Below are positions 14,995 to 42,674 of a stretch of 64,000 nucleotides of DNA, one piece after another (position 1 is the first letter of the stretch; every line of letters starts with the position of its first letter). Source of the stretch: Heteronotia binoei (Eukaryota); the NCBI RefSeq assembly GCF_032191835.1, contig NC_083223.1:257610001-257674000 (forward strand). Direction: 5' to 3'. Both the position numbers and the translations under genes were made by a program. Under the pieces are notes generated by a model, which saw nothing but the letters and a program-made list of their open reading frames with translations, did not search any database and was not told the origin of the DNA.

Positions 14995-16439
14995 AAGAAC
15001 GCCAGTGAGTGTAACGAGACTGCTGGGTCTGTAGGTCTTGCGCTGGAGCAAAGACAGAAGCCGAGCACCCCAGTCCTGTGACAGGTCCAAATGAGAACAA
15101 TCCCCCCCACACCCAGTTTTCCGGCTGCCGTCAAAGGGGGTGTCTTAAGGAGGGGAGGCAGCAGCCAGAGAATCCCTCCACCAAGCCAGGATCCACGTCC
15201 AGAGTGTGGTTAGTGGGAAGTGCCCTCAGGTCACAGTTGGCTTATGGCAACCCCGTGCGGTTTTTGAAGTCAGGAGACAAATAGAGGGGTTTTTGCCATT
15301 GCCTGCCTCCATGTCACAACCCCAGGAATCCTGGGAAGTCTCCCATCCAACTACTAGCCAAAGCCAACCCTGCTTAGCTAAACTGACAGAAATCTGACAT
15401 TAAAACAACAACAACAACATAATACTCAAAAAGCACTTGGGAGAACACTATAATATGCTGGGTCATTCCATTGCTGATCTAAGAGTAGCAATCCTCAAAC
15501 ACGGATGCTTCAAGGGGAGATTACAAGGTGAGATCACTGGATTTCATTCACAAATTCAGAACGATGGACTCCCTGCCCCCCCCCATCAGTCTTTACACAG
15601 TGAGTGGTTAAAATGTGGAATTTGCTGCCTAGAGGAGGTAATGATGATCCAGGCACAGACAGCTTTAAAAGGGGATTAGATAGATTTGTGGAAGATAATT
15701 CTGTCAGTGGCCACTAGCCATGATGACTAAAGGGAACCTCCACATTCAGAGGCAGTCCACCTCTGAATTCCAACGCCAGGAGGCAGCATCAGGAAAAGGC
15801 CTTGGCTTCTATGCCCAGTTCCTGGACAGAATGCTGAACTAAATCAACCTCTGATCTGATTCAGCAGAGCTCTTATGTTGTTATGTTCAGGGCTGAATAA
15901 GGACATAAGATTTCTCTGTCACTACAGATGCTAATTTTCTGCCCTCCAAGCATTTCCCCTCTGCTCTAATCAAGCTGTGCATTGTACGTTTGCATCACCC
16001 CTCCCACCTTTTGACTGGAATACAAGGACTCTGAGATCTCCATTCCAGCTGGCAGGGCTTTTTTTGTAGCAGGAACTCCTTTGCATGCTAAGCCACACAC
16101 CCCTGATGTAGCCAATCCTCCTTACAGTAGGCCCTGTGCTAAGAGCCCTGAAAGCTCTTGGAGGATTGGTTACATCAGGGGCGTGTGTGGCCTAAGATGC
16201 AAAAGAGTTCCTGCCACAAGACATGCACATCAGATGTTTGAGAGCCACAAATAGATGGGGGAAGGGGAGGTGGAAAGAAAGCAACTTTAAATGCCTTTTC
16301 CAAGCTGGCCGATGAGATGGTGGAAGCCTCCAGAGCCACTCAATGTGTGTGAAAGAGCTCGCTATGTGGCTCGCTAGCTGCATTTTGACCACCCCTGTTA
16401 GCACGACTCCCAGTAACTATAGAAACTGAATCTCCGCCT

Positions 16440-16900
16440 CTTCTTCCTATGGAGGACTTCCAGAAGAAGTTCCACCAATCGACGCTAACGGCCAAGAGTC
16501 AACGGACGGTCTCCGAGATGTTACGTCGACGCAGCTCCTCCAATCAAAAAGTCGAGAGCGGTTCGTGATTGACAAAGAAGGGGTAGGCCAATGGGAGAAT
16601 ACATTAGGACAGCAAAAGACCCACCCTCCGTCTCTGTCTCCCGTCTCTGTTTTCAAGGTAAGCCCATTCAAAACCAGTTGAATAAAGATTGGACGAGCGC
16701 GACCCCAGGCCAAGAAAGCGATCCAATGAGCGCCGCGAGTGGGCGGGCAGGCGGAGAGCCAGTCGGGAGGAGGGGAGAGTGACAGATGGGCACCGCAAAG
16801 CCTCGCCTTTCGATGTGGCGGGAGAGAAGTGACAGGGAAGAGCAGCCAATCAGGAGGGAGGGGGCGGGTCCCTCGAGGCCTCTGCTTTGTGGTGGGTAAG
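16440..16900 (+). promoter_or_regulatory. ZBTB3: CpG-island promoter of ZBTB3 with clustered CCAAT boxes
   Basis: CCAAT at 16475, 16540, 16588, 16723 and 16846, ATTGG at 16688, GC box near 16860. Consensus donors after 16657 (AAG|gtaagc) and 16895 (TGG|gtaagt); acceptor before 18362. Confidence 0.7.
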
Positions 16901-17789
16901 TGGGGGGAAAAGAAGGGGTTCTCCAGCAACACCCAACGCACCCCATGCTGGGGGGAGGAAAAAAGGGTGCCTTCCTTCATATTTGTATTATATGCTGAAA
17001 GAAGGAAACTCGTGAAATCCCCTGCGGGGGGGCCTGGGGAGGCCATGTAGAGGGGGGTCAAGGTGGGGGAGGGGTGGACCAGGGAGAACTGTCTTTGGGA
17101 AGGGGGTCCTCATGGGGGGCAGCTATAATGGGGTTAGGGTTATGGGGGAAGCAGAGGAAAAACGCAGATGCGGGGGGGAAGGGGAGAACCCGCCCAAGGT
17201 TCAGGAGGGGAGATTCATTATGTGGGGAATTGGAACATAACAGGCAGGTATTATTTGGGAGCACACCAGAACATAGGCTGAAGGCAAGTGGGTGTGGGGA
17301 TTCATTACAGAGAGAATTTTTAAGGGATGGAAGGGTTGGGTGCTAAGGAGGGGTCTGGTAAGAGGAGCTTAGAGTAAGGGACATTCTTGTTGGGAGCACA
17401 ATTTGGGTGAATTGGTAATTGAGGGGAAAACATCCTTATAAAGGAAATATGGTGTGTGTGGGGGGGGGGAGATTCCAACAGACTGGCAGCAGATATCTAG
17501 ATAAAGAGGACCCATAGCAATGCATTTGTGCTAATTATTGAAGACAGGCATACAGGTACTGGGAACAGCATGGGCTCATTTGGGATGCTTTGGAAAGGTG
17601 CTCAAGTTATGCTGACTGCCGGGAGTAAAATTTGTGGAGGGATCTGGGAGGAGAAAAGCCTTGGCATCGGCTGTCTAGCTTAACAAGCATTTGGGTCAGA
17701 GAGGTTGTAGTACCCCAAATGAAAGAGATGGAGGATTGGAGTGAGAAATCTCTAGGCAAGTTCGAAGTAAAAATTTCTACCTTTCTGCT

Positions 17790-17990
17790 CTAGGCCAGGC
17801 AAGCTTGATCTTGTCAGATCTCAGAAGCTAAGCAGGGTTGACTTAGATGGTACTTAGATGGGAGATCTCCTTGAAATACCAACAGTTGGGAGGACAGGGG
17901 CGGACAGGGGCAGGCTTTATTCAGCCTCCACTCTAAATAACCTCCAGGCCCCCAATAGGGGTCAGTCACCAGAAGCTGCCATGACTTCCA
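17790..17990 (+). mobile_element. 5S rRNA-derived SINE (representative copy; others at ~12.79-13.18, 23.77-23.95, 32.06-32.44 and 52.82-53.02 kb)
   Basis: gatcttgtcagatctcagaagctaagcaggg...tacttagatgggaga matches the 5S rRNA internal promoter region, followed by a non-5S tail. Confidence 0.7.
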
Positions 17991-18412
17991 GGTGTGTGTG
18001 CACATATATATACAGACATATAAGTACAAAAATAAAAGTTCTACCTTTCTGCCCCTCAGACAGCAAAAGGCAAAGGTTGGTCGCTTGAAGGTAGAGCCCC
18101 AGATAGCAGAGGTGAGGATGCTGTCCCAGAAAGGCCCCCACGTCATTTTTAAAGCCTCTCAGGTAGTCTTGCTGGGAAAACTGCTCTGGAGACCTGCTGC
18201 CAGACAGAGGAGATCATTTGGGCTAGATGAACTAATAATATAAGCTAACTGTTCAACTTGCCTTGGATTCCAGAATGTGGCCCAAGGTCTGGAAATGTAA
18301 CTTTTCACAGCCCTTGTAATGAAGTTACTAAGTGTCTCCTCCTTTTTCCTTGCATCCCAAGGGCATAAAGGTATGCCATTAGTGTCTCCACAATCCTGAA
18401 AGGACCGCTACC

Positions 18413-19807
18413 ATGGATTTCCCCGACCACAGCAAGAACCTGTTGCGGAGCCTGCGGGACCAGCAACACGAGGGTTTCCTTTGCGACTGCACGGTGCTGG
18501 TGGGCAACACCCAATTCCTGGCCCACCGGGCCGTGCTAGCCTCGTGCAGTGCCTTCTTTCACATGTTCTACAAGGAAGGGCTGGACAAGGGGGACTTGGT
18601 GTGCATCAACAATGAGATTGTCACGGCCCCGGCGTTTGGACTGCTCCTGGAATTCATGTACCAAGGCAGCCTGTCCTTCAGTGACACTCCAGTGGAGGAC
18701 GTCCTGGCTGCTGCCAGCTACCTGCACATGAACGACATTGTGAAAGTGTGTAAGAAGAAACTGCAGGCCCGGGCTTTGACTGAAGCAGACAGCACCAAGA
18801 AGGAAGAAGATTCCCCAGCCAGTTCAGAACTTCTACCCAGCACCTCCAAGTGCCAGCCACTGGCCCCTGAGGCACAGTCATTGCCCCCACTCCCTCAGCC
18901 TTGTGAAGCAGAGACGAAAAACACAGAGGAGCGGAAGGGAGGAGAGAAAGCCAGTTCTGATGAACTGCTGGCCTCCACGCTAGACGTTGCAGACACCACC
19001 CAGCCTGGCATGGAGGGCGATTCCCCACATGCCCTTCCCCCAACCAGACCCCTTCCACCAGCTGTCATTGACATCTCCCTCTCCAGCCCCAGCAGTTCTA
19101 CCGAAACCATCTCACACAGCTGTTTTCCCCTGGGGAACATTGCTGAGGGCCCTACCAGTATGGACACTGCTCCGGAGAAGTATGCGGAACAGCTGGAAGG
19201 CAGCGTCGGTGTAGTTTGCCAAAAGGAGCCAAACAGGTCCTCCATCAAAGTCAAAATGGAAGCCATTGTGATCTCTGATGAGGAGCCAGACACAGCTGAG
19301 CAGCTGGAGGGGCAGAACCCAGAGGAGAGGCTGGAGAGTGTCTTCCAGCGGCCTACTATGGAAGCAGGGTCAGTTGGAGGCTGCAGCCGGCATCTGGACA
19401 ACTTTGCAGAGCCTGGTGGGCTAGAGGAAGTATCTTCAGAGGGTGCCTTCCTGCCTCAGGAAACTGTACCCTATCATATGATCCCTGTGCCCAGCGGGCA
19501 AAGTTTCTCCAACATGGCGATTCCGCCTCTGCACGAGCAGATGTATCTACAGGACTATGAGGTTCACCCTAACTTTGGCATCTTCACTGAGGACATGCCC
19601 ACTTGTAAGACATGCGGAAAGACCTTCTCCTGCTCCTACACACTCCGGCGCCATGCCACAGTCCACACACGGGAGCGTCCCTATGAATGCCGCTACTGCA
19701 TGCGCAGCTACACCCAATCTGGAGACCTCTACCGGCACATTCGGAAGGCACACAATGCAGACCTGGCAGCCAAACGTTGCAAACAGGATGTGGAGAATCC
19801 CTCGTAG
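18413..19807 (+). CDS. ZBTB3: Zinc finger and BTB domain-containing protein 3 (464 aa, single coding exon)
   Basis: N-terminal BTB ([46 protein letters not shown]...[14 protein letters not shown]). Two C2H2 fingers ([21 protein letters not shown]; [22 protein letters not shown]) nearly identical to mammalian ZBTB3 as I recall it. Confidence 0.96.
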
Positions 19808-22019
19808 GGTGCCCACATCTGGGCCAAAGTCTGAGGTTCATCAGCTCAGTTGCCAACCAACATGAAGGCCAAATTTTTCTCCTTTTTGAACTTTGTGCAA
19901 AAAGCCACAGTGTCTGTAGCCAAATGACAAAGCCACTTACTACTCCGCATTTTTCTTGGTTCAGTCTTCCCACACAGTCCTTCAGTGTTCCTCCAACTTT
20001 TGCCTTGAGGATTTGGTGTTGTATTTTCACAGGGTAGTTCTTGGTCAACACAATTCATATCCAGGCTTTGGATACTGCACATAGTTTGGAAGAAGCCACA
20101 GAATATGAACTCTTAGTATCTTGGAAAGAATTTTTTCTCTGTCTATTTATGTCTTTAGGGAACATGAGACTGGAGGAGGAATGAGATCTCTTGGTTCCCC
20201 AGCCAAGGGATCTTGGCTTGGTTTTTGCTCGAAAGAGGGTGTGGAAGCTTTTTAATCGTGGCAGTTTATGGAGATTGTAATTTCATTTGAAAACCTTTTC
20301 TAGCCCAAAACTCTGTGCACAACCTATAGAGATGTGAAGGCCCAGAAAAAAATAGGAAAATTCAAGGCGGAGTGTGCCCCTGCTATTATTTCTCTAGGAC
20401 TTTTTATCTGTTTGTCCAGCAGAAAAATTGAGAACGTTTGGGGAACACTTCTGTGAAATATTTTCGCTTTTAGAATGAGTAAAATGCTTTTTAAGGGTAA
20501 AGGTTTTTGTATTCAAAATGTATAGGATGAAAACATACAAGGGTTTAAATTTTTCAAGTAGGACATTTTGGGAAGTGCTGACTGCCCCCCATAAAATATG
20601 TTCTGTTTCTGAGGGAGAAAAACCTTGTCTTACAAAGCATTGAACTCATTCCAAACGTATAGGATGAAAAAAAATCTGAGGTCTTTCTCAAGGGTTCAGT
20701 ATTCTTAATGTTAAGATGTTAACTTGATATCCAAACATTCTGCCAGTCCTACGTTTTGGGACTGCACAAAAGTCTGTTAATAGCCTTTCTTTTGTTTACT
20801 ACAGAATTTGTTTTTTGTTTTTTTTAACCTTCAAAATGTATTGTTTCCTATCTCACAGGTGGAAAACAATCAAAGACACCTGCGTTTTATTCCTGTGACT
20901 TTAAAATTTCCAGAAATTTTACATCTCTGAGGAAGCCGCTTGGCATGTCCCCAGTGACATCATCTCCTCCTGTCGTGTGGGTGGAGTCAGGCAGCAGTTT
21001 TTCTCCAGCCAGTTTAGCCAGGGATCCTGGAGACTTTTTTTGCAATCTTCTGGGCATAGAACAGGGGTCGCTGAGATGTGTGTGGGAGTACTTGGGAATC
21101 TCCTTTATTGTCCAGGGGGTTGGACTAGATGATCCTGGAGGTCCCTTCCAACTCTGTGATTCTATGAACTCTGGCTAAAGAGGCTGATCTGTTGAGATCA
21201 TTCTAATATTCCCATGTTACAAATGGAGGCTGTGAGACATGGGCTTAGTGCTCCCCTGTGTGGGTGGCATAGCCCTGAACTCTCTTTTTATTCAGCTTAA
21301 ATTTGCTTCGTTCCCTCTTTCTCCAGTCCCTGCTTCAGAATCTCAAAGCTACCACTGCCAGTTTCCAGCTCACCCTCAGGACTCATACCCTTCCGGTATC
21401 CCTTTTGCTTTTTCTTCCTTCTCTCCAAAGCTGTTGGCCTCACTGGGGTTACCTATTGGGGCAGCGGCTTCCAGACCTGAAAGTCTGCCACTATGTAGAA
21501 CCTCAATAGTACCCCTTGGGGCTGTCAAATATATGGCCCATGGGCCAGATATAGCCCCTGCAAGACTCCAGTCAGGCCTGCAAACAGACCTCTGATAAGG
21601 TCTGCTGCTTCTTACTTTCTGTTCCTACTTCCTGTTTCCAGCACTGGAGCTGGCTTTCCCCCAGTCTCTCCTATTCCTGCTTTGCAGAGGAGAGAAAGAA
21701 AGCCATGCCTCCTTTCTCTCGATTGGCTGAGGGCTTCTCCCATGGAGGGGGGGGGGAGGAAAGAGCCAGAGTGAGAGTCCCATAGCACTTTCAAGAAGAC
21801 CAAGAACAACATTTTATTCCAGGTATAAGCTTTTGTGTGCCTGTACACTTCTTTGGCAGGGGAGGGGGGCGGGCTGGGAGAAGGAGGGAAAGAAAGAGCC
21901 AGAGAGAGAGTCCCATGGCACTCGGAGAGATCCCGCTTTCGAGTTCTAACAGATGGGGGGAAGAAATCGAAGAGCACAGTTTGCATTCCTTATTAGTGGA
22001 AGGGAGCAAGAGTGCAGTA

Positions 22020-27585: not shown

Positions 27586-30500
27586 TTTCCAGTGCTGCTC
27601 ATCCTGAGGCAAACCTCAGTCTTGATAATTCGCCTGAGGAGGGCCAGCAGATCTCGAAGTCCAGGACCTGGACATCAGGTCGAGGACACTGGGCAGCAAA
27701 AAAGGGTCAAAGGGGGGAGGGATGGGTAGAAAGTAATATATGGGATAGAATAAAAAAAAGTAATTATTAATGAAGTAAGAAATTGAAATTTATCACCATA
27801 TGTTACCAATAAAATTGTTTGAAGACAAAAAAGGGTCAAATATACACAAGTGTTTTTTTTAAAAAACACAACTTCTCCATGATTATATCAAGGTTGTGCA
27901 GATGTGAATGGTTCTACATCCAAAGCTGGGTGGAGCACCACTGTCAAATGTTAGCCCACAAAATTCCATTAAGTAAAAATCTTAGCCCAGAAAGATTCTA
28001 ACCACCCTATCTTCTATCCCAGTACAGTCCAACTTGAAGGGATCATTTAACAGGGGAAAAGCACTTTATTTTTCACAACCAGTCTTTATATAGAATTTTG
28101 AAGACCTTGAAAGGTTCCACATCATTTTGTGTGACAAATCTGACTTTTGAGCCATTTTCCTCATTCCATATATACAAGGGCTGGCTCAGGTTCAGCAGGG
28201 GTGGAGAGACAACCCTCATGTGCTCAGAGATATTCCGGTTGTTAAGGTTACATCAAACATATTATATGGTCCTAACATTGTGTGTCTGGGAGGTGCATAG
28301 GGCCTGTAATAGTCACATGGCTCTTTTGGTTGTTGGGTATTGCAGATGTAGCTCTATGAGCCGTGGCATGAGTACCGATGTTTTACAGCTTTCAAAAATG
28401 TTTCAAAGCTGATAAGTCTAAAAGAATTTACCAAATTCACTGCCATACACAGTGACTGTCAAAGGTAGGCATTTATCTGACTTCTAATGTGCCTGGAATC
28501 AACCAAGTCAATTATATTGCCAACTGGGCATTAACACTAGGCACTATGAGACGACGGATATTTTACACAAGCCTCAGAAACAAACAAGAATCAATGCATT
28601 TGTGAATCTAGCCTTGAGCTAGGAATATTCCTGCGGACTGTCCCTTATTGTACAGCCATTGCTCTTCATAGCCTTCAGGACCGCCTTTTCCCACAAAATA
28701 AGCCTTCTTCTGGCTTCTTACCTCCCCCTCCCCACTCTAAAGAAAATATGAGCCATAAAGTTTGCACATACAGCTCTTTATCTGACAGAGATTAAGTTGT
28801 ACAATACCCATAATGCATTTCAGCCCAATGAGGCCCAAGTAAACCCAAGAGTGTCTGTTCACTCTTCCCAAGATTTCAAAAGGACCCTCAACGTACTGTG
28901 AGCTATTCCAAAAGCTTTTAGCTTTCTACTGTGTGGGAACAACTCCACAATCAACCTTCCTTTAAAATATGCTTGTGGTTAAGGGGCCAAAGCAAGATAC
29001 AGGGACACACTAAGCACTTCTTCCTTCATTGGGAGCATCTACAGAAGCATGACGCCTGGGATTTAAACCTTTACCTCTCCCATATCCACCTTGCTGTTTC
29101 TCCAACTGAAAACAACCCCACAGAGCTAATGTTCATCCAACTGAAGCAGGCACAGTTATCATACAGCATGTTCACCCAGCTGAAGCAGATACAGGTATCA
29201 TACAGCATGCCTTATCTTTACCTCAGTGAAACACAGAGTAGAGCCAAAAACAGCACAAGGGAAAAGGTTAGACCCCCCCACACACACACACCATTGTTCT
29301 AATCCAAATTGCTTGGCTACTAATTACAAAGAAAAGCACCTGTGAGCTGCAGCAAAGGAATTTTCCATCACCCCATTTGACTGCAAGTATATCCATTCAT
29401 TCACTGTATTAGGTCATAAAAGTGGGGCAATATATGCTGGGAGGGCTTTTCTCCCCAACTTCAGGCCCCTTCCCTCCATCCCACTAGCAGCAAAGGCCCG
29501 TCCTTCTGTTGCAAATTGCTCATTTAAAGCTTCAGCTATAAGTTGGTCCAGAAGAAGAGTCTCTTAACTTCCCATCTCCGGATTTGCAGCAAGAAACGAC
29601 CCAGGTATTTTGCCACCGCCATCTCTCCTCCTGATCCCACACTAAAAGACCAAGTGTGCTGTTGCCAACTTACACTGTAGCCAGATACTTCCAACTTTAT
29701 TAAAACCAGCCACACAAAAAGGCACACAAATCTTAAAAGCTTTATACTCCATTACAGAACAGTGTTAGAATTAGCAGTAAGACTCTAGAACAGCAGTTTA
29801 CGAGGCCTGGAAGGGAATTAAAATCTTGCAAAGGGCTCTGCTTTAAACCAGCAGCTGATGTTCTGTAAAGCTTATTTTAAGATCCTGGCAAGGCAATGGT
29901 TTGCATGGCCCCTGCTATTATCCCTCAAGCTTAGACCTCAAACAGCATACGTTGCTGCCAGTAGCAATGGTTAGGAAACACTAGAAAAAAGGAGGTGTCC
30001 ACATGGACAAGAACAAGAAAAGAGATTTCACAGTGTGAAGACCAGTTTTAAAAACGTGCACTTTCTACTCAAAAATGGACCTATTACAATTGTCTTAAAA
30101 GTGGTTGGTTGACAAAAAAAACAAGTCTCTTTCCAATATTATTGGAGATATAGATGTATTTACCCTTGCTTTTTTCACCAATCCATTCATTCCCTCTTCA
30201 ACGTGAAGATGCTCTCTAAACTCTCGTTCTCAATTTGCAGTGAAGCATCCCCCCTCCACCCTCATGCAGGATTTGCATCTTTATAAGGAAAAAATGTACC
30301 CAAGTGTCACGAAAGTTTCCAATAAAACCCACCACCTACCCCAGAGAGGAGGCAGTTTCCTGAAAGCAGCAATGATGCATGATGTAAGAAGGGTTCCATC
30401 TCCATTTTGTGAGAACTACTACCTATAGCAAGCCTCCCCTAAAACTTGCCCTTGACTGTTAATTAAAAGCTGTCATCTAAGGGTAGCTCAATCTATTCTA

Positions 30501-30879
30501 CTTGAGAGGACCATAGCTATAGCTGCCTCATCAACAGTGCCCAGGTGACCCCTTGACACCTCAGGGCCCAGATCAGAACTGGAAGACTTTAGAGGGCCTA
30601 GAAAGGGCTCTGAATTGAAACACTGTGATATACAGAACATTGCATCCCCTCCCTAATGCCTATCACCCAAGAGGCAACCCAAAATATTTACTTCGTCCAT
30701 TGGCAAGACAGCTTCCACCTTTCAGAAAGATCTCCAAGGGTGACACAGCAGAGGAGCATACATCCAGTCCAGCATTCTGAGAAGAACACAATCCAGTTTT
30801 TAAAGAGAAGGTGGGTGGTGTGGTCAGAGAGGCAGAAACTGATTTCAACCAATAATTTTCCCTGAACAGCTCAGTGCTG

Positions 30880-31042
30880 TCAGCCAAACACCTCCTGTGA
30901 GGCGTAAGTCATGTACAAGAAGCCGTCTTCATCTTTGTAAGCCGAGTACACTTCAGAAATGGTGGCTGACATGTTAACCATACTGCGGTTATTATCAGCC
31001 AGGAAATAGAAGGCTTGTGTGGAGCCAATGCACATTCTGTTT
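30880..31042 (-). CDS. MAP1LC3CL: LC3C-like ATG8 protein, exon 4 (terminal; ...NRMCIGSTQAFYFL...KDEDGFLYMTYASQEVFG*)
   Basis: Acceptor ttccctcag|A in phase 2, 163 nt, carrying the ATG8 C-terminal signature DEDGFLYMTYASQEVFG then TGA at 30880-30882. Confidence 0.93.
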
Positions 31043-31409
31043 CTGAGGGAAGAGAGTAAGAAATATCATGATGTGAGAATACATTGTTTTTATTCTGTAA
31101 TATGCCTGACATCTCAGTGAGAAAGGCAGTCAAAAGTAGATAAAACAAGGCTTGTGATCATACCAATTCTCCCCCCACCCCATGTGTAATGAGATATTTT
31201 TCCTCCCCACAAAACTAGATTCTCTTAAATCCCATTAATGTAACTGCAGCTTAAATCAGGCCCCAATACAGTGTGGAAACACTCGCAGCCAGGACTTTTG
31301 AGTAGGAACGCAGTTCCAGCCAGCTTGGTATCAAGGGGTGTGGCCTAATATGTAAATGAGTTCCTGCTGGGCATCTTCCACAAAAAAATGCCCTGCTTGC
31401 AGCCTATCA

Positions 31410-31544
31410 CAGGGGTGGCCAACGGTAGCTCTCCAGATGTTTTTTTCTACAACTCCCATCAGCCCCAGCCAGCATGGCCAATGGCTGGGGCTGATGGGAG
31501 TTGTAGGCAAAAAACATCTGGAGAGCTACCGTTGGCCACCCCTG
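31410..31544. mobile_element. Palindromic 135-bp hAT MITE
   Basis: CAGGGGTGGCCAAC termini, ~62-bp near-perfect arms, perfect 8-bp TSD gcctatca (31402-31409, 31545-31552). Confidence 0.9.
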
Positions 31545-31799
31545 GCCTATCAGATACTTAACCCCCTTGGTTCTACAACCTGCTAGGGCCCTCCGGACAT
31601 TCCTTTTGTCAGGGTAAAACTGCAGTGCCCAAGTAAACACAACTCTTCTAAAAATAAAACTGCAGAAATACTTAAGGGTTTATGTATAAATATATGCACT
31701 ATTATAAGTTATCTTTCCAGCAATCCCACATGGGAGGCTGGTGTTCTGTTAACTGAATGGGAGAGCTGCAGTTTAGGGGAACTGCAGCTTGACTAAGAC

Positions 31800-32015
31800 C
31801 ACCCACGGTGGCTCAGTGGTAGAGCATCTGCTTGGGAAGCAGAAGGTCCCAGGTTCAATCCCTGGCATCTCCAAAAAATGGGTCCAGGCAAATAGCTGTG
31901 AAAAACCTCAGCTTGAGACCCTGGAGAGCCGCTGCCAGTCTGCGAAGACAATACTGACTTTGATGGACCAAAGGTCTGATTCAGTATAAGGCAGCTTCAT
32001 ATGTTCATATGTTCA
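31800..32015 (+). mobile_element. tRNA-derived SINE (copies on - at ~13.99-14.12, 25.57-25.77, 44.21-44.42 and 55.04-55.23 kb)
   Basis: A box tggctcagtggt and B box ggttcaatcc in a tRNA-like head, followed by a conserved body and a (catatgtt)n tail. Multiple diverged copies. Confidence 0.85.
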
Positions 32016-32763
32016 ACATATTAACTGCAGAGGAGAGATTCAAGTTGGATTTGAGCTGCCCTAACCTGGATAGCCCAAGCTAGCCTGATCTTGTAAGCTA
32101 AGCAGGGCTGAGTCTGACGGTCAGTATTTGGGTAGGAGACCTGACAGGGCTTTTTTTGCAGCAGGAACAACTTTGCATATTAGGCCACACACCTCTGATG
32201 TAGTCAATCCTCCAAGAGCTTACAGTAGGCCCTGCAAGAAGAACCCTGTAAGCTCTTGGAAGATTGGCTGCATCATGAATGTGGCCTAATATGCAAGAGT
32301 TCCTGCTACAAAAAAAAGCCCTGGGAGACCACCAAGGAATACCAGTGTCAGGACATAGAGCATGGCAGTGGCAAACCACCTCTGAAAATATCTTGCCTTG
32401 AAAACCCTACAGGGTAACCATAAGCTGGCTGTGAGTTGAAAGCAAAAAAGTCTATGCATGTAGTGGCTTATCAGCTCCAAGTCGAATTACAACAATACAG
32501 TAATCCCACAGAGTTTTCCAAAGGAAGAGGAGATCCTGAGGTAACTACTGTGGACTTGCCAAAGCCCAGAGGAAGGAAAAGTGACTCAAGAGGATTTCTC
32601 ATTGATACAAGAGACTTAGGTTTGTAGCCTTCCTGGTACTCAGACCTTAGAGGGACTAAATGACGGCTAACACTGGAGGAATGCAAAAATCAACACAACT
32701 CAGATCATCCAAAAGCACCATCCCTGTGGATCAAGATTCACGGCACAGATAAACTGATCTTAC

Positions 32764-32870
32764 CGGATAATTGAGACAAACTGGCCCATAGTGAGGTCTT
32801 CCGGAACAAGAAATTTGACCTTGCTCATGACGGGCAGTATTTTCTCCTTGGCATAGCGCTCCAGGATCAC
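32764..32870 (-). CDS. MAP1LC3CL: LC3C-like ATG8 protein, exon 3 (VILERYAKEKILPVMSKVKFLVPEDLTMGQFVSIIR)
   Basis: 107 nt, ag|GTG...CG|gtaag. Length and phase match LC3 exon 3 as I recall it. Contains ERY and KxKFLVP motifs. Confidence 0.93.
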
Positions 32871-33829
32871 CTATGAAATAAGAATGCAGTTGGCTTGGTA
32901 AGGTCAGTGGTCCAGGCTCATCTCATACATTGGCTCATCACATGTCTCCAAGATGCTCAAGCAAGCAGGGAATGGGAAGAGCCCTTTGTTTGCTCCCATC
33001 AAGATTCAAAGGTACACTGTCCACAAAGACCACGTCACTTAGCCCGCCCCTCTTCAGCAATTAAAAAGATAAAGGTAGTCCCCTGTGCAGTTTCCGCAAG
33101 AAGGGTACTCATTTTACCAACTTCAGAAGGATGGAAGGCTGAGTCAACCTTGAGCCGGCTACCCGAACCCAGCTTCCACCAGGATCAAACTCAGGTCATG
33201 AGCAGAGCTTGGACTGCAGTACTGCAGCTTACCACTCTGCACCATGGGGCTCCTCTCCATATTTGCCTAGCCCTATGTTTGCATTTCCTAGCTCCATGTT
33301 CGTAGCGGATACAACAATTCAATTTTAAGAACCAGTAGCAGGCACAAAATATGAGTGTCCACGTAAAGCTATCAAGCTTCTGGGTGAGTTTTATACTGCC
33401 CATCCCTACCTAGAGCCTATCTGTAATACTGCATTTATCAGATTAAATGCCCCAACTCAGTCGAGATTGAAAGGTGAACAAAACAGAGGAGGAGTGGGTT
33501 GGCAAGAGCAAGTTCCTCTGAAAATTCTCCTGGGATAATCTAGAGAGCTTAAGATATAAGAAAGGACTTTAAGGGTCACCACCTGCAATGTGAAGAGGAA
33601 CTCAATTTCAGTAAGGCGTGGGAAGAAATATTCCACACCCAGAATTTTCACCCCAATATTTCCGTTGCTGGGACTGTATGTGCTCAGGAACCCACTTGCA
33701 CTCAGGTGACGGAAAGGTGCCCATAGGGTCCAAAATATTGGGGGATCCCTGGGCTACACCATTTCCAACTTTGAATGTGTATGGAGTGCCTCATTAAAAA
33801 AAAAAACTGGTCAGGAAGATTCAAGCCCC

Positions 33830-34355
33830 AAGATGCTAAATTTCTATGTGTGGAGAATTTCTGCATATGAGGAACCGTTATGTGAAGACATCAGACAGGC
33901 TTCCAATTCTGCTATCATTTCACAGAATATGCAAAACAGAAAGAGTTCAGGAAGGCATTTCTATAAAGGGAACAGAACAGTGTGGAACAGCTGAGATGCT
34001 TGCTTTATATGCGAGAGGACAAGTCTATTGCAAAGTTAATTGTCTCTATCAACTTCTGTTATCAAAGTTCATTGTCTCTATCCTTTGCATGCTTGCTTTA
34101 TATGCGAGAGGACAAGTCTATTACAAAGTTCATTGTCTCTATCGACTTCCTTTTCTTACATTTCTTACATTTGTTTTAAGATCTGTAAATCTACCTTTCC
34201 ACATTGTATCATATCATACCTGGATACCATTGTATCATATTATATTTTTTTCAGTGCAGCTGTTGTTTGCGCGGTTTCCCAATTTCATAATCCTAGTTCT
34301 CCCGTATTGTCTATTGAGGCCCTTGCTGTTTGATTAAACTGCTTATTAAAAAAAT
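33830..34355 (+). mobile_element. Probable L1/Tx1-type LINE 3' fragment with internal 61-bp duplication
   Basis: Frame WRISAYEEPLCEDIR resembles squamate L1 ORF2 C-termini, followed by an AT-rich 3' UTR and an A-rich end. Confidence 0.45.
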
Positions 34356-34528
34356 TTTGTAACCTCCCCCTTTGCATCTCAGTGAGAAAAGTGGTCCATA
34401 AATTAAGTAAATGAAAGTAAAATGTGACTGCCCACTTGCAGTCGTGAGTAGTGTAATTCAAACACAGACTGATCCTCTCAGTGAAGGTAGCGCTTCATTG
34501 GAATTTTACTTTGAAGTAAACACACTAA

Positions 34529-35227
34529 GGCTGCAATTACACACACTAAATAATGCACTTTCAATCCAGTTTCAATGCACGTTCCAACTGGATTTTATTG
34601 TATGAATTGGCAAAATCCAGTTGGAACGTGCATTGAAAGTGGATTGAAAGTGCATTATTTATGTTGGAAATCAGTCCTAAAATGGCTGACTGATTCCATC
34701 TTAGTAATAGTAATGTTGTTTCTGCAATGTCATGCTGAGTTATGCTGCATCATGGCCCAGCTGTTTCTTGTTACTGAGGTAAGGTGGAATGACCTCACCT
34801 GTAATTAGGCTTTATGCTGACTCACAGAGCTGATGCAACCTCTGGTGAGCTTGCATGATTGATGTGTGTATTTAGGGAAGCTCAGTGAGCTTGCTCTTCC
34901 TGCCTGTAAGGATTGTGGGTACTGTGAGACTCACCGTCCGGGCGGCAGCAAACACTGCTTGTGTTGATCCTGTGCTACTGTGCTTGGATTGTGCTGTGTA
35001 TACTTACTGGTGTATACTGTTATCTACTGAAGTGTGTACTGATTACTGTGTATGACCTTGGCCTGGCAACGACTCTGAATATTGGATACTGTCCTGGTAA
35101 ATATATTCCACTGTTGAATACAGTTGTCTCTCTTGTCTATTAATTCCTGTGTTTGCCTGTCCCTCTTCTTCAGTGTTTTTCTGCTGCACGCAAATTCTCT
35201 AACAATTTAGTGTGTGTGATCGCAACC
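34529..35227. mobile_element. Palindromic MITE interrupted by a solo LTR; uninterrupted relative at ~41161-41300
   Basis: TIR ggctgcaattacacacactaaat vs atttagtgtgtgtgatcgcaacc, and an internal palindrome. Confidence 0.75.
34662..35204. mobile_element. Solo LTR of an LTR retrotransposon (543 bp)
   Basis: TG...CA termini (tgttgg...ctaaca) flanked by a perfect 5-bp TSD attta (34657-34661, 35205-35209). Removing it restores the host MITE. Confidence 0.85.
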
Positions 35228-36933
35228 TCACCTAACTACCAACCCCACTGAAGCAACACAGTTCAGGAACATTTGCCAGGTTAGTACTGCTATAATTATA
35301 GAGTATTTAAAAAAACAACAGCCGACCACCACATCAGACCACTAGGCATTAAGCAAAAAGGATATGCACTTTCAGCATGCACCCTTACAACAGGAGGGCA
35401 TTTCACTCCATACAAGCCAGAGCCCTGCAAGGACATTTCATTTCTCCTTTCTCCCTTCCCTGAAAGCCCCCCAGGGCAACTTACATCATTCTCCTCTCCT
35501 TCTTTGCATCACAGTCTTGTGAGCTACCTTAAACTAAAAATGGGTGATTGGCCCACAGGGCTGTCAGCTCTGGGTTGACAAATTCCTGTAGAATTTTTTT
35601 TGGCGGGGTTTGGGGAGGCACTTCAGCAGGGTATAATGCCATAGAGCTGGGGTGATCAAACTTGTTTAATGCAAAAGCCACATAGAATAAATGTCAGATG
35701 CTTGAGAGCCGCAAGACATGAACGTCAGATGTAGGAAGAAAGGAAGGAAGCTTGGGGGAAGTGGAGGTGGAAAGAAAGCAACTTTAACTTTAAATGTGTT
35801 CTCCAAGCTGCCGGCTGGCTTGGCGAAGTGACTAAACGGGACAAATGTCTTCCCCAAGCCAACCGATGGGGCTTCAAGAGCCACACAATAATATGTGTAA
35901 AAGAGCCACATGTGGCTCCCAAGCCACAGTTTGGCCACTTATTATTATTATTATTAATTTCATTTATAACCCGCCCTCCCCCACCTCGGCAGGCTCAGGG
36001 CGGCTAACAACATTCCATAAAAACATACATGCCATAGAGACCAACTTGCAACGCAGCCATTTTTTCCAGGGGAACTGATCTTTATCAGCTAAAGGCCAGT
36101 TGTAATTGAGAGATCTTGATCCACCACCTGGAGATTAGCAATCCTATGACCACAGTCACCCAGCCAGGGGTAATAGCGGAGCTGGGATTCAGACTTGGGT
36201 CTCCCAAGCCTAACCTGAAACTCTAACCACTACCCCACACTGGCTTGTGGGGAGGGACTACTATTGAACAGTAGCAAGGAAATAACATTGGGTTAATCAT
36301 GCAACTGGGGAGGTATCCAGTCACCCAATGGTCCTGCCATTCCTGGAAAGAGCCCTGACTCTTCCTGAGAGATACCAAGGCCCGCAAGCTGGCAATTTCA
36401 GATCTGCCCACCCCCCCAGTGCAAACTTGGGAGTGCTTTCCAGGTTTCTTGTGGAGGGAAAACTGACTTGCCTGTTCATGGTTTAGGGTTGCCAGGTCTG
36501 TGTTGGGAAATACCTGGATGGAAGTGGATCGAGGAAAGAGTGGAGTCTGGGGAAGGGCCTCAGCAGGGTACAATGCCATAAAGTCCACCCTTCAAAGCAG
36601 CCATTTTCTCCAGGAGAGCTGATCTCTGCTAGCTGGAGATCAGTGGTAAAAGCAGGAGATCTCCAGGCCCTACCTGGAGGCTAACAACCCTCAACACAGC
36701 AAGTTACTAAATGGATAATAGATTGAATGTACTTTGGGAACAGTCACCTATGAACTGAAATGGGAGGTGTCTAGTGTACACAGTTAGGTAGAGCAGCTTG
36801 TGTGAAAAGTTCCATTTAATGGCTGGGTCTCCTACAAACACGCATAACAGAGCAGAGCCTCTCTCTATCTCCTGCCCCTGGGCCACATTATTATTCACCA
36901 CTGTTAAATAGAACAATACCCCCCAAACGTTAC

Positions 36934-36989
36934 CGGTCGTTTGCAGGGAAATTTGATGCGAATAGAAGCCACTTCACTCTTCCTGCAAG
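36934..36989 (-). CDS. MAP1LC3CL: LC3C-like ATG8 protein, exon 2 ((A)CRKSEVASIRIKFPCKRP)
   Basis: 56 nt, ttccag|CT...CCG|gtaac. Phase 1 in and phase 0 out, matching LC3 exon 2 size as I recall it. Confidence 0.9.
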
Positions 36990-37225
36990 CTGGAATAGAA
37001 AAAGTAAAGTCCCATCAGAAACAAAAAAACCTCATTTTTTTCCTTTCAAGTTAGTTTTCTCTCAACAAGCAAAGGAAGGACACAAAACAAATTACGGCCG
37101 CGGCCCCCACCCCACAATTTACTGCAGCACCTCTAGCCAGCAGGGAGCGCTCCTAGCCGGGAAAGTCAATTTGCAATACAAAGTTAGGGGCGTTTGCACA
37201 GGCTGGGAATAGAGTCGATACTTAC

Positions 37226-37265
37226 CAAAGGGTTTTCTGTGTTTGAATGGAGGGCGCGGATCCAT
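37226..37265 (-). CDS. MAP1LC3CL: LC3C-like ATG8 protein, exon 1 (MDPRPPFKHRKPF)
   Basis: 40 nt from ATG (gaaaATGG) to G|gtaag, with the FKxRK motif of LC3 helix 1. The four exons give a 366-nt CDS (121 aa). Assignment to the C-like paralogue rather than MAP1LC3C itself is inferred from synteny. Confidence 0.9.
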
Positions 37266-38585: not shown

Positions 38586-40584
38586 AGGAAGCAGAGTGAG
38601 TATAATAATAATAATAAATTTATTCTTATATCCCGCCCTCCCCCGCCGAAGCGGGCTCAGGGCGGCTCACATGACATGGTTTACACCATGATTACACTAA
38701 AATCCATCAATACATTAAAAACAATTAAAATAGTTAAATACAATTCAAATTAAGTTCATTAACAATTAAAATGTATCAAATATAAATTAAGTTAAAGTGC
38801 CACAGTTCAGAATGTATATAGGATGGCTAGGTGGCATCTCCGGGTGCCATCTTAAATGCGAGTTGACAGAGGGTGGTTTTGCAAGCCCTGCAAAATTGAT
38901 TTAGGTCTCGCAGGGCTCGCACCTCCTCTGGTAGTTGGTTCCACCATTTGGGGGCCTTTGTGGAGAAGGCCTGCTCCCTAGTTGCCTTCAATCTGGCCTC
39001 TCTTGGTCCAGGGATTTTTAAAAGATTTTGGGAGCTAGATCTCAGTGCTCTCTGGGGAACATATGGGGAGAGGCGGTCCCTAAGGTAGGCAGGTCCTCGG
39101 CCATATAGGGCTTTAAAGGTGATAACCAGCACCTTATAACGAACTCGATACACAATCGGCAGCCAGTGCAGCTGTACGTATTCCCACCGTGGTAGTCCCA
39201 CTAACAGCCTGGCTGCTGCATTCCGCACTAGCTGCAGCTTCCGCGTTCGGTACAAGGGCAGCCCCATGTAGAGGGCATTACAGTAGTCCAGCCTCGAGGT
39301 GACCGTTGCATGGATCACAGTTGCCAGGTCGCTACGTTCCAGGAAGGGGGCCAACTGCCTCGCCCTCCTAAGATGGAAGAAGGCAGATTTGGCAGTGGCA
39401 GCTATCTGGGCCTCCATTGTCAAGGAAAGCTCCGGTAGCACTCCCAGGCTCCTGACCCTGCGCACTGGTATCAGTGACACACCGTCAAAAGTTGGTAGGG
39501 AGATCTCCCCTCCTGGCCCGCCGCAACCCACACAAAGGACCTCTGTCTTCGATGGATTCAGCTTTAGCCCACTCAGCCTGAGCCAGCCCGCCACGGCTTG
39601 CAACGCCCAGTCCAAGTTTATAGGGACATCGTCAGTATAAATGGGCAGTCTTTGCAGTGGAGGACGGTAAGCAGTGGAGTGCTGCAGGGCTCTGTACTGG
39701 GTCCCATGCTCTTTAACTTGTTCATAAATGATTTGGAGTTGAGAGTAGGTAGTGAAGTGGCCAAGTTTGCAGATGACACTAAATTGTTCAGGGTGGTGAG
39801 AACCAGAGAGGATTGTGAGGAACTCCAAAGGGATCTGTTGAGGCTGGGTGAGTGGGCGTCAACGTGGCAGATGAGGTTCAATGTGGCCAAGTGCGAAGTA
39901 ATGCACATTGGGGCCAAGAATCCCAGCTGCAAATACAAGTTGATGGGGTGTGAACTGGCAGAGACTGACCAAGAGAGAGATCTTGGGGTCATGGTAGATA
40001 ACTCACTGAAAATGTCAAGACAGTGTGCGATTGCAATAAAAAAGGCCAACGCCATGCTGGGTATTATTAGGAAGGGAATTGAAAACAAATCAGCCAGTAT
40101 CATAATGCCCCTGTATAAATCGATGGTGCGGTCTCATTTGGAATACTGTGTGCAATTCTGGTCACCGCACCTCAAAAAGGATATTATAGCATTGGAAAAA
40201 GTGCAGAAAAGGGCAACTAGAATGATTACAGGTTTGGAACACTTTCCCTATGAAGAAAGGTTAAAACGCTTGAGGCTCTTTAGCTTGGAGAAATGTCAAC
40301 TGTGGGGTGACATGATAGAGGTTTACAAGATTATGCATGGGATGGAGAAGGTAGAGAAAGAAGTACTTTTCTCCCTTTCTCACAATACAAGAACTCATGG
40401 GCATTCGATGAAATTGCTGAGCAGTCGGGTTAGAACGGATAAAAGGAGGTACTTCACCCAAAGGGTTATTAACATGTGGAATTCACTGCCACAGGAGGTG
40501 GTGGCGGCTACAAGCATAGCCAGCTTCAAGAGGGGGGTTAGATAAAAACATGGAGCAGAGGTCCATCAGTGGCTATTAGCCACA

Positions 40585-40714: not shown

Positions 40715-42276
40715 AATCTCTGCAATATGGGACTACTAACACTGGCCTACCTCACCGGGTGTCGTAAGGATTACACACACTAAAGGACAGTATGTGAAAC
40801 ACCTTGAACCCTCAAAAGCACTGCATAAATGCTACAGTGGAGAAGAAAGAGGTCATGTTACAGAAGACAGTGACTGTCTCTTCTGATTCAGAAAGGAAAA
40901 TTTAGGCTCTTGTGAGGGTCAGATATATTAAGAGCCAAGGAACTTCTATAGTCAGAGGCAGTATATCTGCAGGAGTCTGGCGCTAAATTGTTAGAATGCC
41001 AGATAGATACCCTTGATATCATGTTGAAAGGAGTTCCTCTGGCCAGTTGTGTGCTGTCTGAGAACTAGGAGGGATATAAATATAATAATCCAATATTATC
41101 AATTCTGCCACTGTGGCACAGGGGGTTAGACTGAGTATCAGAATAGGATCCGGAAGTCGTAGGCTGCAGTCACACAGACTAAATAATGCACTTTCAATCC
41201 ACTTTCTAACTGGATTTTACTGTGTGAACTGGCAAAATCCAGTTGGAAAGTGCGTTGAAAATGGTTTGAAAGTGCATTAATTAGTGTGTGTGATCACAGT
41301 CCACCCTGCTATGGAAGCTGGCTCTCTTTCTCTCAGTCTAACCTACCTCACAGAGTTGTTGTTAGGATAAAATGGGGAGAATGATGTCCCAAACTGACTT
41401 GGGTCCTCACTGCGGCAAAAGGTGGGTATAAATAAATGAAGGCCAGGCCCTCAGATGGAGAGTTGCCAACAGGCCTGGAGGGGGGAAATGCCCTGTCCGT
41501 TTAACAGAGGAACAAAGGACGTCATTTACCAGGTGCTGATACTTATCTCTCCTTCATTTCCACACATTAAGCCTCTAGTAAAGGGCCAGGACGTTTTTCT
41601 CCAGGTCTGTTGGCAACCCTGCCCCCTTCCCATTTGGCAAGAGACTTTCTAATTATGGAGGCTCTATCAGGCTCCACTTTTGGTTCTTTCTTCTTTCTAT
41701 GACGCTGGGAACATTTTAATCTTTGATTCAGCCCTTGAAAATATATATATCTCTTTTTAAAAAAATCCATGTTCAGAAATCGGGCCAAAGAAAACGAGCT
41801 TGGAATGTCAAGGCCATCTGGTTTATTAGCTCGCTCGCTCTCTTTTGTAGGAAAACTTTTTTGCTCTTTAAGAATGTTTTATCTAGTTCGAGCCAATCAG
41901 AAACTGGGAGGGGGGGCGAGGGAGAGAGGGAACCTGTCTCCACGTGACTCTTTCAAACCCATCCCCTTTGTCTGAACTGCTGTTTTCTTCTTGGCCAGGC
42001 GGAGAATTGCAGAAAGTCGCGGGCACGGAGCGCTTTCTCCGCGTCGCCAACGCGGTAGTCGTTATTGCCCGGCATCTGTCGAGGTGCCTCCCCGCTTTTT
42101 CTCCACGGCCCCGCTTCTCCTCCGGTTTCTCTTTACCGCGAGTTTTCCAAGGGTAGTTTTGCCGTTAGCTGCCTCCTTCTCCTCCTGAAGTCTGCGCTCC
42201 TCCGAAGCGCATGCAGCCTCCTCTCTCCAAGAGGCAGCAGGAGGTGGGGGGAGCGGATCCCCAGCCCGGGGGGGTC

Positions 42277-42453
42277 ATGGCCCGCAGAGCCGTGCCTCCC
42301 TCGCTGTGGTCCGGCAACGAGCGGCTCCGCATCGGGGAGCGCCTCCAAGCCAGCCTGGCGGGGCTTCTGGAGCTGGATCTGCTGCGCGAAACGCAACGGG
42401 AGACGGTGGAGCGCGCTCTGCAGCGCAGCCAGGAAGATGGAGACCGGCAACAG
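42277..42453 (+). CDS. DACT4: Dapper (DACT) family protein, first coding exon; probably DACT4 (an upstream in-frame ATG at 42211 is possible)
   Basis: MARRAVPPSLWSGNERLRIGERLQASLAGLLELDLLRETQRETVERAL matches the Dapper N-terminal motif (DACT1 RQEATLAGLAELEYLRQRQ, DACT2 RLRAAFAGLQELQGLRATQ, DACT3 WLEGSLAGLCELHWLRERQ). Strong Kozak gtcATGG, donor CAG|gtgagg, inside a CpG island. Paralogue call rests on synteny. Confidence 0.75.
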
Positions 42454-42674
42454 GTGAGGCGGGGGGGGGGGGGCGGGTTGGGGGGCGCTGTGGCATCGGG
42501 GTCTATCCCGAAGGGTGGGCGAGCAGCAGAAGGAAGACAATGGCTACTTTCTGGCGGGTTGGGGCTTTTTACAGATGGTGCTGTTGGCTGGGCTTAGCGG
42601 CTCTTGGTCTGATCCAGCAGGGGAACTTCCTATGATTTCCTGAGACTCAGTTAGAAAGGCAGACAGACTAGAGA

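What the first reader, a model, noticed from the sequence alone, without database searches (positions are those of the whole stretch)
30871..31042. Vertebrate LC3 paralogue that is born pre-processed: stop codon directly after the lipidation glycine
Seen: the last exon reads ...TAC GCC TCA CAG GAG GTG TTT GGC TGA (YASQEVFG*), so Gly121 (= LC3B Gly120) is the C-terminal residue. Established: human LC3/GABARAP proteins carry residues after this Gly, and ATG4 must remove them before ATG7/ATG3 conjugation. Gly-terminated ATG8s are known from plants (ATG8h/i) and apicomplexans. Inference: this protein could be lipidated without ATG4 priming, giving a priming-independent ATG8 route. The stop is followed by CAG CAC TGA, and LC3C continues Gly-Cys, so a single TGC>TGA change that left a vestigial tail is a plausible origin.
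Basis: partly seen in the sequence, partly recalled or inferred. Interest (0 to 1): 0.78.

Follow-up and report, generated by a model that had tools for sequence, protein, structure and literature searches.

The report
Gecko LC3C-like gene ending at glycine
This gecko autophagy gene (an LC3C-like ATG8) really does stop right after the glycine that gets attached to lipid, but the same gene ends the same way in all squamates and turtles examined, so it is a conserved, already annotated gene with a little-noticed trait rather than a one-off oddity.

Summary
On the minus strand a four-exon gene (CDS 37265..30880) encodes a 121-aa ATG8/LC3 protein. Its last codons read ...Q E V F G followed by TGA at 30882-30880. 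The spliced model is identical to the RefSeq protein "LC3C-like [Heteronotia binoei]".

The trait is not particular to this genome.
- 22 squamate and 5 turtle LC3C-like proteins end at the same Gly.
- In all 7 loci I read, the codon after Gly is TGA, although synonymous sites are near saturation outside the geckos (dS about 1-3) and dN/dS is 0.05-0.19.
- The gene is a paralogue of LC3C, not its orthologue. It sits between a Dapper gene and a ZBTB3-like gene, and the same species also keep an LC3C with a 17-18-residue tail.
- A Gly terminus also occurs in LC3C proper of Xenopus tropicalis and three other frogs, in one sturgeon LC3C, and in many invertebrate LC3C-like proteins.
- Alligator appears to have lost the stop (GGA).

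The "vestigial tail" (CAG CAC TGA) is not conserved even among geckos.

Transcript-like contigs show exons 2-3-4 spliced and a long 3' UTR, but the listed pieces leave a 28-base hole over the stop.

Lipidation without ATG4 priming is inferred from published work on engineered Gly-ending human LC3s. I found no paper noting the trait in vertebrates. Earlier scan notes concern this same window only.

The parts
37226..37265 (-). Coding exon 1 of the LC3C-like gene: ATG at 37265-37263, 13 codons plus 1 base, GT donor at 37225-37224
36934..36989 (-). Coding exon 2 (56 nt), AG acceptor at 36991-36990, GT donor at 36933-36932
   Evidence: The loose end of the X1 contig at 32871 is the reverse complement of this exon's 3' end.
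32764..32870 (-). Coding exon 3 (107 nt), matching the ATG8 domain core
   Evidence: Pfam PF02991 E=1e-08. Joined to exon 4 in the X1 contig.
30883..31042 (-). Coding part of exon 4 (160 nt), ending with the GGC codon of Gly121
   Evidence: Pfam PF02991 E=4.7e-13. Best solved relative is human LC3C.
30880..30882 (-). TGA stop codon directly after the conjugation glycine
   Evidence: Same codon at the same place in Gekko, Sphaerodactylus, Varanus, Pituophis, Rhineura and Carettochelys.
28761..30879 (-). Probable 3' UTR (about 2.1 kb).
   Evidence: X1 contigs cover 29656-30862 at depth 112-233 and 28736-29699 at lower depth. A poly-T loose end before 28761 indicates a poly(A) tail on the minus strand. 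GATAAA lies about 15-20 nt upstream of it. Non-conservation is shown.
42211..42594 (+). ORF holding the first coding exon of the neighbouring Dapper (DACT) gene, head to head with the LC3C-like gene
   Evidence: Pfam Dapper match to profile positions 1-35. Same arrangement in Gekko, Sphaerodactylus, Varanus, Rhineura and Carettochelys.
18413..19807 (+). BTB/POZ plus C2H2 zinc-finger gene (ZBTB3-like), convergent downstream neighbour
   Evidence: Pfam BTB E=2.5e-26 plus zinc fingers. Same neighbour in Gekko, Varanus, Pituophis, Carettochelys and Alligator.

Best explanation
This is the gecko copy of a conserved sauropsid paralogue of LC3C, annotated as 'LC3C-like'. It is a functional 121-residue ATG8-family ubiquitin-like protein whose open reading frame ends at the conjugation glycine. 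Shown here: the gene is intact, spliced and transcribed, is under purifying selection, and has kept a TGA directly after Gly since at least the squamate-turtle ancestor. Inferred: the newly made protein needs no ATG4 cleavage and can be taken up directly by ATG7 and ATG3 for attachment to phosphatidylethanolamine, while ATG4 would still be needed to take it off membranes or proteins. The same animals keep an LC3C with a conserved 17-18-residue tail, so they carry one tail-bearing and one tail-less LC3C-type protein. In the LC3C family as a whole the tail varies from 0 to about 30 residues and has been lost or gained several times.
For: The gene model has GT..AG introns and is identical to RefSeq P0170. 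ATG8 Pfam matches are above cut-off. The full-length match to human LC3C has E=2.5e-44, with Gly121 on the terminal Gly. 22 squamate and 5 turtle proteins end at Gly. TGA follows Gly in 7 of 7 sauropsid loci read. Pairwise dN/dS is 0.05-0.19, with dS of about 1 or more outside the geckos. In the tree, sauropsid LC3C-like forms one clade (100/97), separate from LC3C proper of the same species. Dapper-LC3CL-ZBTB synteny is conserved. The X1 contig joins 31042 to 32764 with the intron removed, runs on into exon 2, and there is 3' UTR coverage with zero depth in intron bins. Engineered Gly-ending LC3B and LC3C bypass ATG4 priming and are conjugated in ATG4-deficient cells (PMC6526816, PMC6709618). 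Natural Gly-ending ATG8s are accepted in plants and apicomplexans (PMC7301642, PMC4206529).
Against: No biochemical data exist for this protein; lipidation and independence from ATG4 are inferred. The listed RNA-like contigs leave 30863-30890, which includes the stop, uncovered, so the TGA in this individual rests on the assembly, the RefSeq model and cross-species conservation. Three RNA-seq runs of the species gave no reads on exons 3-4 in the 6% of each run that was read, so expression is low or tissue-restricted. Tail length is labile in the family (at least 4 changes among the sampled vertebrates; alligator GGA). The tail-less state may therefore have little functional weight.
Confidence: 0.8

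Rival explanations
1. The tail-less end is a selectively neutral variant. Priming by ATG4 is fast and constitutive, so whether 0, 1 or 20 residues follow the Gly makes no physiological difference. The stop stays where it is only because any stop near the Gly will do.
For: Tail length in LC3C-type proteins ranges from 0 to about 30 residues, with many 1-residue tails (teleost H or R, amphioxus C, lungfish T). There are at least 4 state changes among the sampled vertebrates. Within frogs, close relatives differ. Alligator reads GGA instead of TGA.
Against: The same TGA is kept in every squamate and turtle locus read, although synonymous sites are near saturation outside the geckos and the 3' UTR just after it has diverged completely. 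LC3C proper of the same species keeps a recognisably conserved 17-18-residue tail, so tails are not simply free to drift.
Confidence: 0.35
2. The gene is a decaying or non-functional duplicate of LC3C, and the early stop is part of its decay.
For: There are unusual substitutions at otherwise conserved positions (KRP for KIP/KLP, MSKVKF for LDKTKF). No reads fell on the exons in three RNA-seq runs.
Against: dN/dS is 0.05-0.19 over deep divergences. All splice sites are intact in 7 species. The ORF is complete up to the functional Gly, with the ATG8 domain above the Pfam cut-off. A spliced transcript contig of depth about 117 is present in run X1. Synteny is conserved.
Confidence: 0.03
3. The stop is an assembly error, or an alternative 3' splice normally adds a tail, so the real protein is a normal precursor.
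For: The listed contigs do not cover 30863-30890. An Ensembl-derived Podarcis model (P0162) replaces the terminal Gly with other residues.
Against: Independent assemblies of 7 species show GGC or GGT followed by TGA at the same place. The RefSeq model is identical to mine. Transcript-like contigs continue colinearly into the 3' UTR, and no joint leaving exon 4 downstream was among the 15 joints listed (32 more were not shown). No listed difference from the window lies between 30399 and 31329 (26 more rows were not shown).
Confidence: 0.04
4. The protein is not conjugated at all. It acts as a soluble LIR-binding adaptor, and the Gly end is incidental.
For: There are no conjugation data. Gecko-specific changes lie near the LIR-docking strand.
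Against: The F-G end and the preceding YASQE motif, which are needed for ATG4, ATG7 and ATG3 handling, are invariant across the clade. The Lys-x-Lys-Phe-Leu docking residues and Arg68/Arg70 are also kept.
Confidence: 0.05

Closest known systems
Human MAP1LC3C (LC3C)
   Same: It is the best solved relative (E=2.5e-44 over residues 5-121), with the same ATG8 domain and the same ...YASQExFG end. The gecko gene falls in the LC3C-type clade rather than with the four unnamed LC3A/B-type outgroup proteins.
   Different: Human LC3C has a 21-residue tail after Gly that ATG4 must remove. The gecko gene has none. It carries a one-residue insertion (LADNN against LVNN) and lies in a different neighbourhood (Dapper/ZBTB3-like, not the FH...CEP170 neighbourhood of LC3C). 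Squamates and turtles have a separate LC3C orthologue with a 17-18-residue tail.
RefSeq 'microtubule-associated proteins 1A/1B light chain 3C-like' of squamates and turtles
   Same: The window's protein is identical to the Heteronotia binoei entry (P0170). Orthologues in 20 or more squamates and 5 turtles share the length (121 or 128 aa), the insertion, the synteny and the Gly-TGA end.
   Different: Nothing essential differs. There are gecko-specific substitutions (KRP, MSKVKF).
Xenopus tropicalis LC3C (map1lc3c) and other frog LC3C
   Same: It is a vertebrate LC3C-type protein ending at Gly with a TGA stop (P0223).
   Different: It is LC3C proper, lying between fumarase and CEP170 as in human, and it has no insertion. 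Other frogs (Bufo, Pseudophryne) have tails.
Arabidopsis ATG8h/ATG8i and Plasmodium/Toxoplasma ATG8
   Same: These are natural ATG8s whose primary sequence ends at the conjugation Gly and which are taken to need no ATG4 priming (PMC7301642, PMC4206529).
   Different: They are distant lineages (about 40% identity to plant ATG8i). In apicomplexans the protein serves the apicoplast.
Engineered pre-primed LC3B-G120 and LC3C-G126
   Same: They have the same C-terminal state. They are lipidated and reach autophagosomes in ATG4-deficient human cells, and they form ATG4-reversible protein conjugates (PMC6526816, PMC6709618).
   Different: They are laboratory truncations of tail-bearing genes, not natural genes.

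Membership tests
ATG8 / LC3-GABARAP family (Pfam PF02991) | ATG8 ubiquitin-like domain above the curated cut-off | tested here: met
   Exon 4 scores 49.7 bits and exon 3 scores 35.8 bits against a cut-off of 27. PF02991 is precomputed for P0170.
ATG8 / LC3-GABARAP family (Pfam PF02991) | Conserved aromatic-Gly conjugation site at the C-terminal end of the domain | tested here: met
   The protein ends ...QEVFG. Gly121 aligns to LC3B Gly120 and to the terminal Gly of the LC3C constructs.
ATG8 / LC3-GABARAP family (Pfam PF02991) | LIR-docking residues (Lys-x-Lys-Phe-Leu strand and Arg68/Arg70, LC3B numbering) | tested here: met
   The alignments show K-V-K-F-L and R-N-R kept. Asp48 and Thr50 are replaced by Ser and Val in this gecko.
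ATG8 / LC3-GABARAP family (Pfam PF02991) | Conjugation to phosphatidylethanolamine by ATG7, ATG3 and ATG12-ATG5-ATG16L1 | not testable with these tools
   This needs cell or in vitro assays.
LC3C orthologue (MAP1LC3C proper) | Groups with tetrapod LC3C in a tree and shares its chromosomal neighbourhood (FH ... PLD5 / CEP170) | tested here: not met
   The gene falls in a separate starred clade with lungfish LC3C-like. Its neighbours are Dapper and a BTB zinc-finger gene. The same species have another gene named LC3C with a tail.
Sauropsid LC3C-like paralogue | Dapper-LC3CL-ZBTB synteny, one-residue insertion after the FY(F/L)L strand, 4 coding exons with phases 1/0/2, and Gly-TGA end | tested here: met
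Naturally Gly-terminated ('born primed') ATG8s | Stop codon directly after the conjugation Gly in the genomic ORF and in the transcript | tested here: met
   The genome shows it, the RefSeq model is identical and 7 species agree. At transcript level the exon 3-4 junction and the 3' UTR were seen, but the listed pieces miss the 28 bases around the stop.
Naturally Gly-terminated ('born primed') ATG8s | Lipidation without ATG4 priming | not testable with these tools
   This is inferred from engineered G120/G126 forms.

The most novel reading that the evidence does not exclude
Reptiles, and independently some frogs and a sturgeon, maintain under selection a constitutively primed LC3C-type protein beside a tail-bearing LC3C. 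This would give a conjugation channel that keeps working when ATG4 priming is limiting or blocked, for example when ATG4 is oxidised or phosphorylated or is targeted by pathogens. If so, the presence or absence of the tail is a regulated, adaptive property of LC3C-type proteins rather than noise.
Probability: 0.2. Interest if true: 0.55.

Novelty: new member of a known kind. Interest (0 to 1): 0.33.

Why it matters
Accounts of vertebrate autophagy, largely built on mammalian ATG8s, treat these proteins as precursors that ATG4 must prime. The data here show that non-mammalian vertebrates carry natural Gly-ending LC3C-type genes. One is a paralogue kept for roughly the age of the squamate-turtle split. 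The other is LC3C itself in the laboratory frog Xenopus tropicalis. This offers natural material for separating the priming and deconjugation roles of ATG4 and for asking what the long LC3C tail is for. It does not reveal a new mechanism. The kind is known from plants and apicomplexans, the behaviour is predictable from engineered human constructs, and the genes are already in public annotation.

Tried and rejected
- The word-based protein search could not be run with the window's own exons, because a 53-aa query only sees proteins of 29-93 aa. I therefore used the representative search with exon 4 to obtain full-length ids and then ran word searches from those ids.
- RNA-seq runs X10-X12 gave no reads on the exons, only on intronic repeats, so they neither confirm nor refute expression.
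- The alligator 'tail' in P0174 crosses an assembly gap.
- DNA for the lungfish orthologue was not available because the file was too large, so its stop context is unknown.
- I looked for a PLD-family neighbour in the window, as seen in turtle and alligator, among ORFs at 13990-18146 and 21239-21986 and found none.
- Six literature searches found no paper describing Gly-terminated LC3 in vertebrates. The library is open-access only, so this is not proof of absence.
- I rejected the pseudogene, assembly-error and 'vestigial tail' readings (see the rival explanations).
- No structure prediction was run. 60-66% identity to solved LC3C and the Pfam matches made it unnecessary.

Full report
**Observation**

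The finding lies on the minus strand. The reverse complement of 30780-31120 shows a polypyrimidine tract and an AG at 31044-31043. An exon follows whose frame ends TAC GCC TCA CAG GAG GTG TTT GGC TGA.

Motif searches and reading of the upstream DNA gave three more exons:
- exon 1: ATG at 37265, coding to 37226;
- exon 2: 36989-36934;
- exon 3: 32870-32764.

All introns are GT..AG. The spliced CDS is 363 nt plus the stop, giving 121 residues. Exons 3 and 4 each match Pfam ATG8 above the cut-off. The whole protein matches human LC3C best among solved structures (E=2.5e-44), with Gly121 on the terminal Gly of processed LC3C and on Gly120 of LC3B.

**Identity of the gene**

A search of cluster representatives with exon 4 and then word searches from the full-length hits recovered a RefSeq protein named [quoted passage not shown] (P0170). 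My spliced translation is identical to it. The window is therefore from this gecko or a very close relative, and the gene model, Gly end included, is already in public annotation.

**How widespread the Gly end is**

- In one search, 22 squamate proteins from geckos, skinks, lacertids, an amphisbaenian, a cordylid, agamids, a monitor, boas, pythons, colubrids, vipers and elapids end at the Gly.
- Five turtle proteins also end there (Carettochelys, Emydura, Lepidochelys, Pangshura, Mauremys).
- I fetched the loci of Gekko, Sphaerodactylus, Varanus, Pituophis, Rhineura and Carettochelys and rebuilt their CDS with the same exon phases and GT..AG introns. In all of them, and in the window, the codon after GGC or GGT is TGA.
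- Pairwise dN/dS is 0.05-0.19. dS is about 1 to 3 between the gecko clade and the other lineages, and is incalculable, a sign of saturation, for two pairs. The gene is therefore under purifying selection, and the stop has been held while neutral sites turned over.
- The sequence right after the stop is alignable only among geckos. It is ordinary 3' UTR, not a vestigial tail.

**Paralogue, not orthologue, of LC3C**

Squamates and turtles also have a protein named LC3C or LC3 gamma of 143-148 residues. Its tail after the Gly is 17-18 residues and recognisably conserved, for example in Podarcis, Tiliqua, Carettochelys, Trachemys and Gekko.

I built a maximum-likelihood tree of 57 proteins with the tails removed.
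- The sauropsid LC3C-like proteins form one clade (support 100/97).
- The lungfish LC3C-like protein is their sister (99/91).
- LC3C proper of ray-finned fish, amphibians and amniotes forms another group.

The LC3C-like gene lies between a Dapper (DACT) gene, head to head, and a BTB zinc-finger gene (ZBTB3-like). This holds in Gekko, Varanus, Carettochelys and Alligator, with partial evidence in the other loci. The window has the same neighbours.

A one-residue insertion (L-V/A-D/E/N-G/N-N/S where LC3C has LVNN) is shared by squamates, the turtle and alligator but not by lungfish.

**The trait elsewhere**

- The Xenopus tropicalis protein P0223 (124 aa) ends at Gly with TGA. It lies between fumarase and CEP170, which from my own knowledge of the human map is the LC3C neighbourhood on 1q43, so it is LC3C proper.
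- Three other frogs share the state, while Bufo and Pseudophryne have tails.
- One Acipenser LC3C ends at Gly, and many teleost LC3C have a single residue after it.
- Hemichordate, echinoderm, mollusc, nemertean and mite LC3C-like proteins also often end at Gly. Amphioxus has Gly-Cys-stop.
- On the tree, the sampled vertebrates need at least 4 changes of state.
- In Alligator sinensis the codon after Gly is GGA, and the frame runs on into an assembly gap, which I did not fill. That looks like a loss of the stop.

Tail length in this family is thus evolutionarily labile, with the zero-length state arising repeatedly and being long-lived in the sauropsid paralogue.

**Reads**

One call was allowed. 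Run X1 is labelled as probable DNA, but it covers exons and 3' UTR and has zero depth in the purely intronic bins, so it behaves like a transcriptome.
- It holds a 389-nt contig (depth about 117) that joins 31042 to 32764 with the intron removed (CT..AC on the plus strand). Beyond 32871 it runs on into the reverse complement of exon 2.
- Other contigs cover 29656-30862 at depth 112-233, and further down to a poly-T loose end before 28761. That is a poly(A) tail on the minus strand with a GATAAA hexamer just upstream. The 3' UTR is therefore about 2.1 kb.
- The listed pieces leave 30863-30890 uncovered, and this includes the stop. The bin depth there is about double what the listed pieces explain, so unlisted contigs lie there.
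- No listed difference falls between 30399 and 31329, but 26 rows were not shown.

The TGA in transcripts of this species is therefore likely but not directly shown. Three RNA-seq runs of the same species label had no reads on exons 3-4 in the roughly 6% of each run that was read, only reads on intronic repeats. Expression is low or tissue-restricted in those samples.

**Mechanism**

Shown: an intact, conserved, transcribed ATG8-family gene whose product ends at the conjugation Gly, with the F-G end, the YASQE motif and the LIR-docking Lys-x-Lys-Phe-Leu and Arg residues kept.

Inferred from established work: ATG8 proteins are activated at the C-terminal Gly by ATG7 and passed to ATG3, and ATG4 is needed first only to expose that Gly.
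- Human LC3B ending at G120 bypasses priming, is lipidated, reaches autophagosomes and rescues p62 turnover in ATG4-deficient cells (PMC6526816).
- Pre-primed LC3C G126 and the other isoforms are conjugated in ATG4 knockouts and accumulate ATG4-reversible protein conjugates (PMC6709618).
- Natural Gly-ending ATG8s are accepted for Arabidopsis ATG8h/i (PMC7301642) and for Plasmodium and Toxoplasma, where ATG4 is kept for deconjugation (PMC4206529).

The gecko protein most likely works in the same way. Whether the missing tail matters physiologically is open. The long conservation of TGA, and of the tail in the sister gene, argues for some constraint. The lability of tails across the family argues that the cost of either state is small.

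**Novelty and verdict**

The gene and its exact protein are already annotated, and the kind (ATG8 born with an exposed Gly) is known. Six full-text searches found no paper that points out the state in vertebrates. A 2026 study of vertebrate ATG gene duplications had no mention of 'glycine' among the terms I searched in it and mentions LC3C only in passing. A 2018 zebrafish review lists map1lc3cl merely as lacking a human orthologue.

I file it as a new member of a known kind. Interest is modest. Its main value is the recognition that reptiles, and Xenopus, offer natural pre-primed LC3C-type proteins.

Noticed in passing
L004:10533-10580 (Alligator sinensis): In the alligator orthologue the codon after the conjugation Gly is GGA instead of TGA, and the frame reads on (G A G P R L ...) into an assembly gap. 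This is an apparent loss of the stop that would recreate an ATG4-dependent precursor.
   Followed up: partly
L003:10001-14244 (Xenopus tropicalis): LC3C proper of X. tropicalis lies between fumarase and CEP170 and ends GGT TGA directly after the Gly. A standard laboratory vertebrate therefore already has a naturally Gly-terminated LC3C.
   Followed up: partly
window 31312-32415 and 32968-33335 (intron 3 of the gene and the start of intron 2): Repeats here collect hundreds of RNA-seq reads on both strands in runs X10-X12, with many 'goes back' and opposite-strand joints. They are probably dispersed repeat families expressed elsewhere in the genome.
   Followed up: no
window 39598-40545 (+), 57202-58163 (+), 58475-59881 (+): These ORFs carry reverse-transcriptase, GDSL-esterase-like and endonuclease/exonuclease/phosphatase domains. 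They are LINE-type retrotransposon remains between and beyond the genes. Assembly gaps lie at 49170-49318 and 52390-52616.
   Followed up: no
I did not examine it.
   Followed up: no
proteins P0172, P0176, P0178 (Naja, Pseudonaja, Laticauda): Elapid snakes have extra LC3C-like models with degraded motifs (for example ...NEDSFLK instead of ...DEDGFLY, and no F-G end). They are possibly decaying duplicates or poor gene models.
   Followed up: no
protein P0162 (Podarcis muralis): A UniProt/Ensembl-type model of the same gene replaces the final Gly with VAPVSQPP. If real, this alternative 3' end would give a non-conjugatable isoform. The RefSeq-type model of the same species (P0163) ends at Gly.
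   Followed up: no
proteins P0001, P0197-P0201 (Lepidoptera): These are tandem two-domain LC3 proteins of moths and butterflies. In five of the six the second ATG8 domain ends at Gly; P0201 (Pararge) ends differently. A 2026 paper describes the Bombyx one (PMC13658554).
   Followed up: no
L002:18047-21295 and L004:15514-20090: A phospholipase-D-family gene lies beyond the ZBTB3-like gene in turtle and alligator. Bird LC3C models are annotated fused to PLD5 (P0252). This hints that the LC3C/PLD5 and LC3C-like/PLD regions are old paralogous blocks.
   Followed up: no
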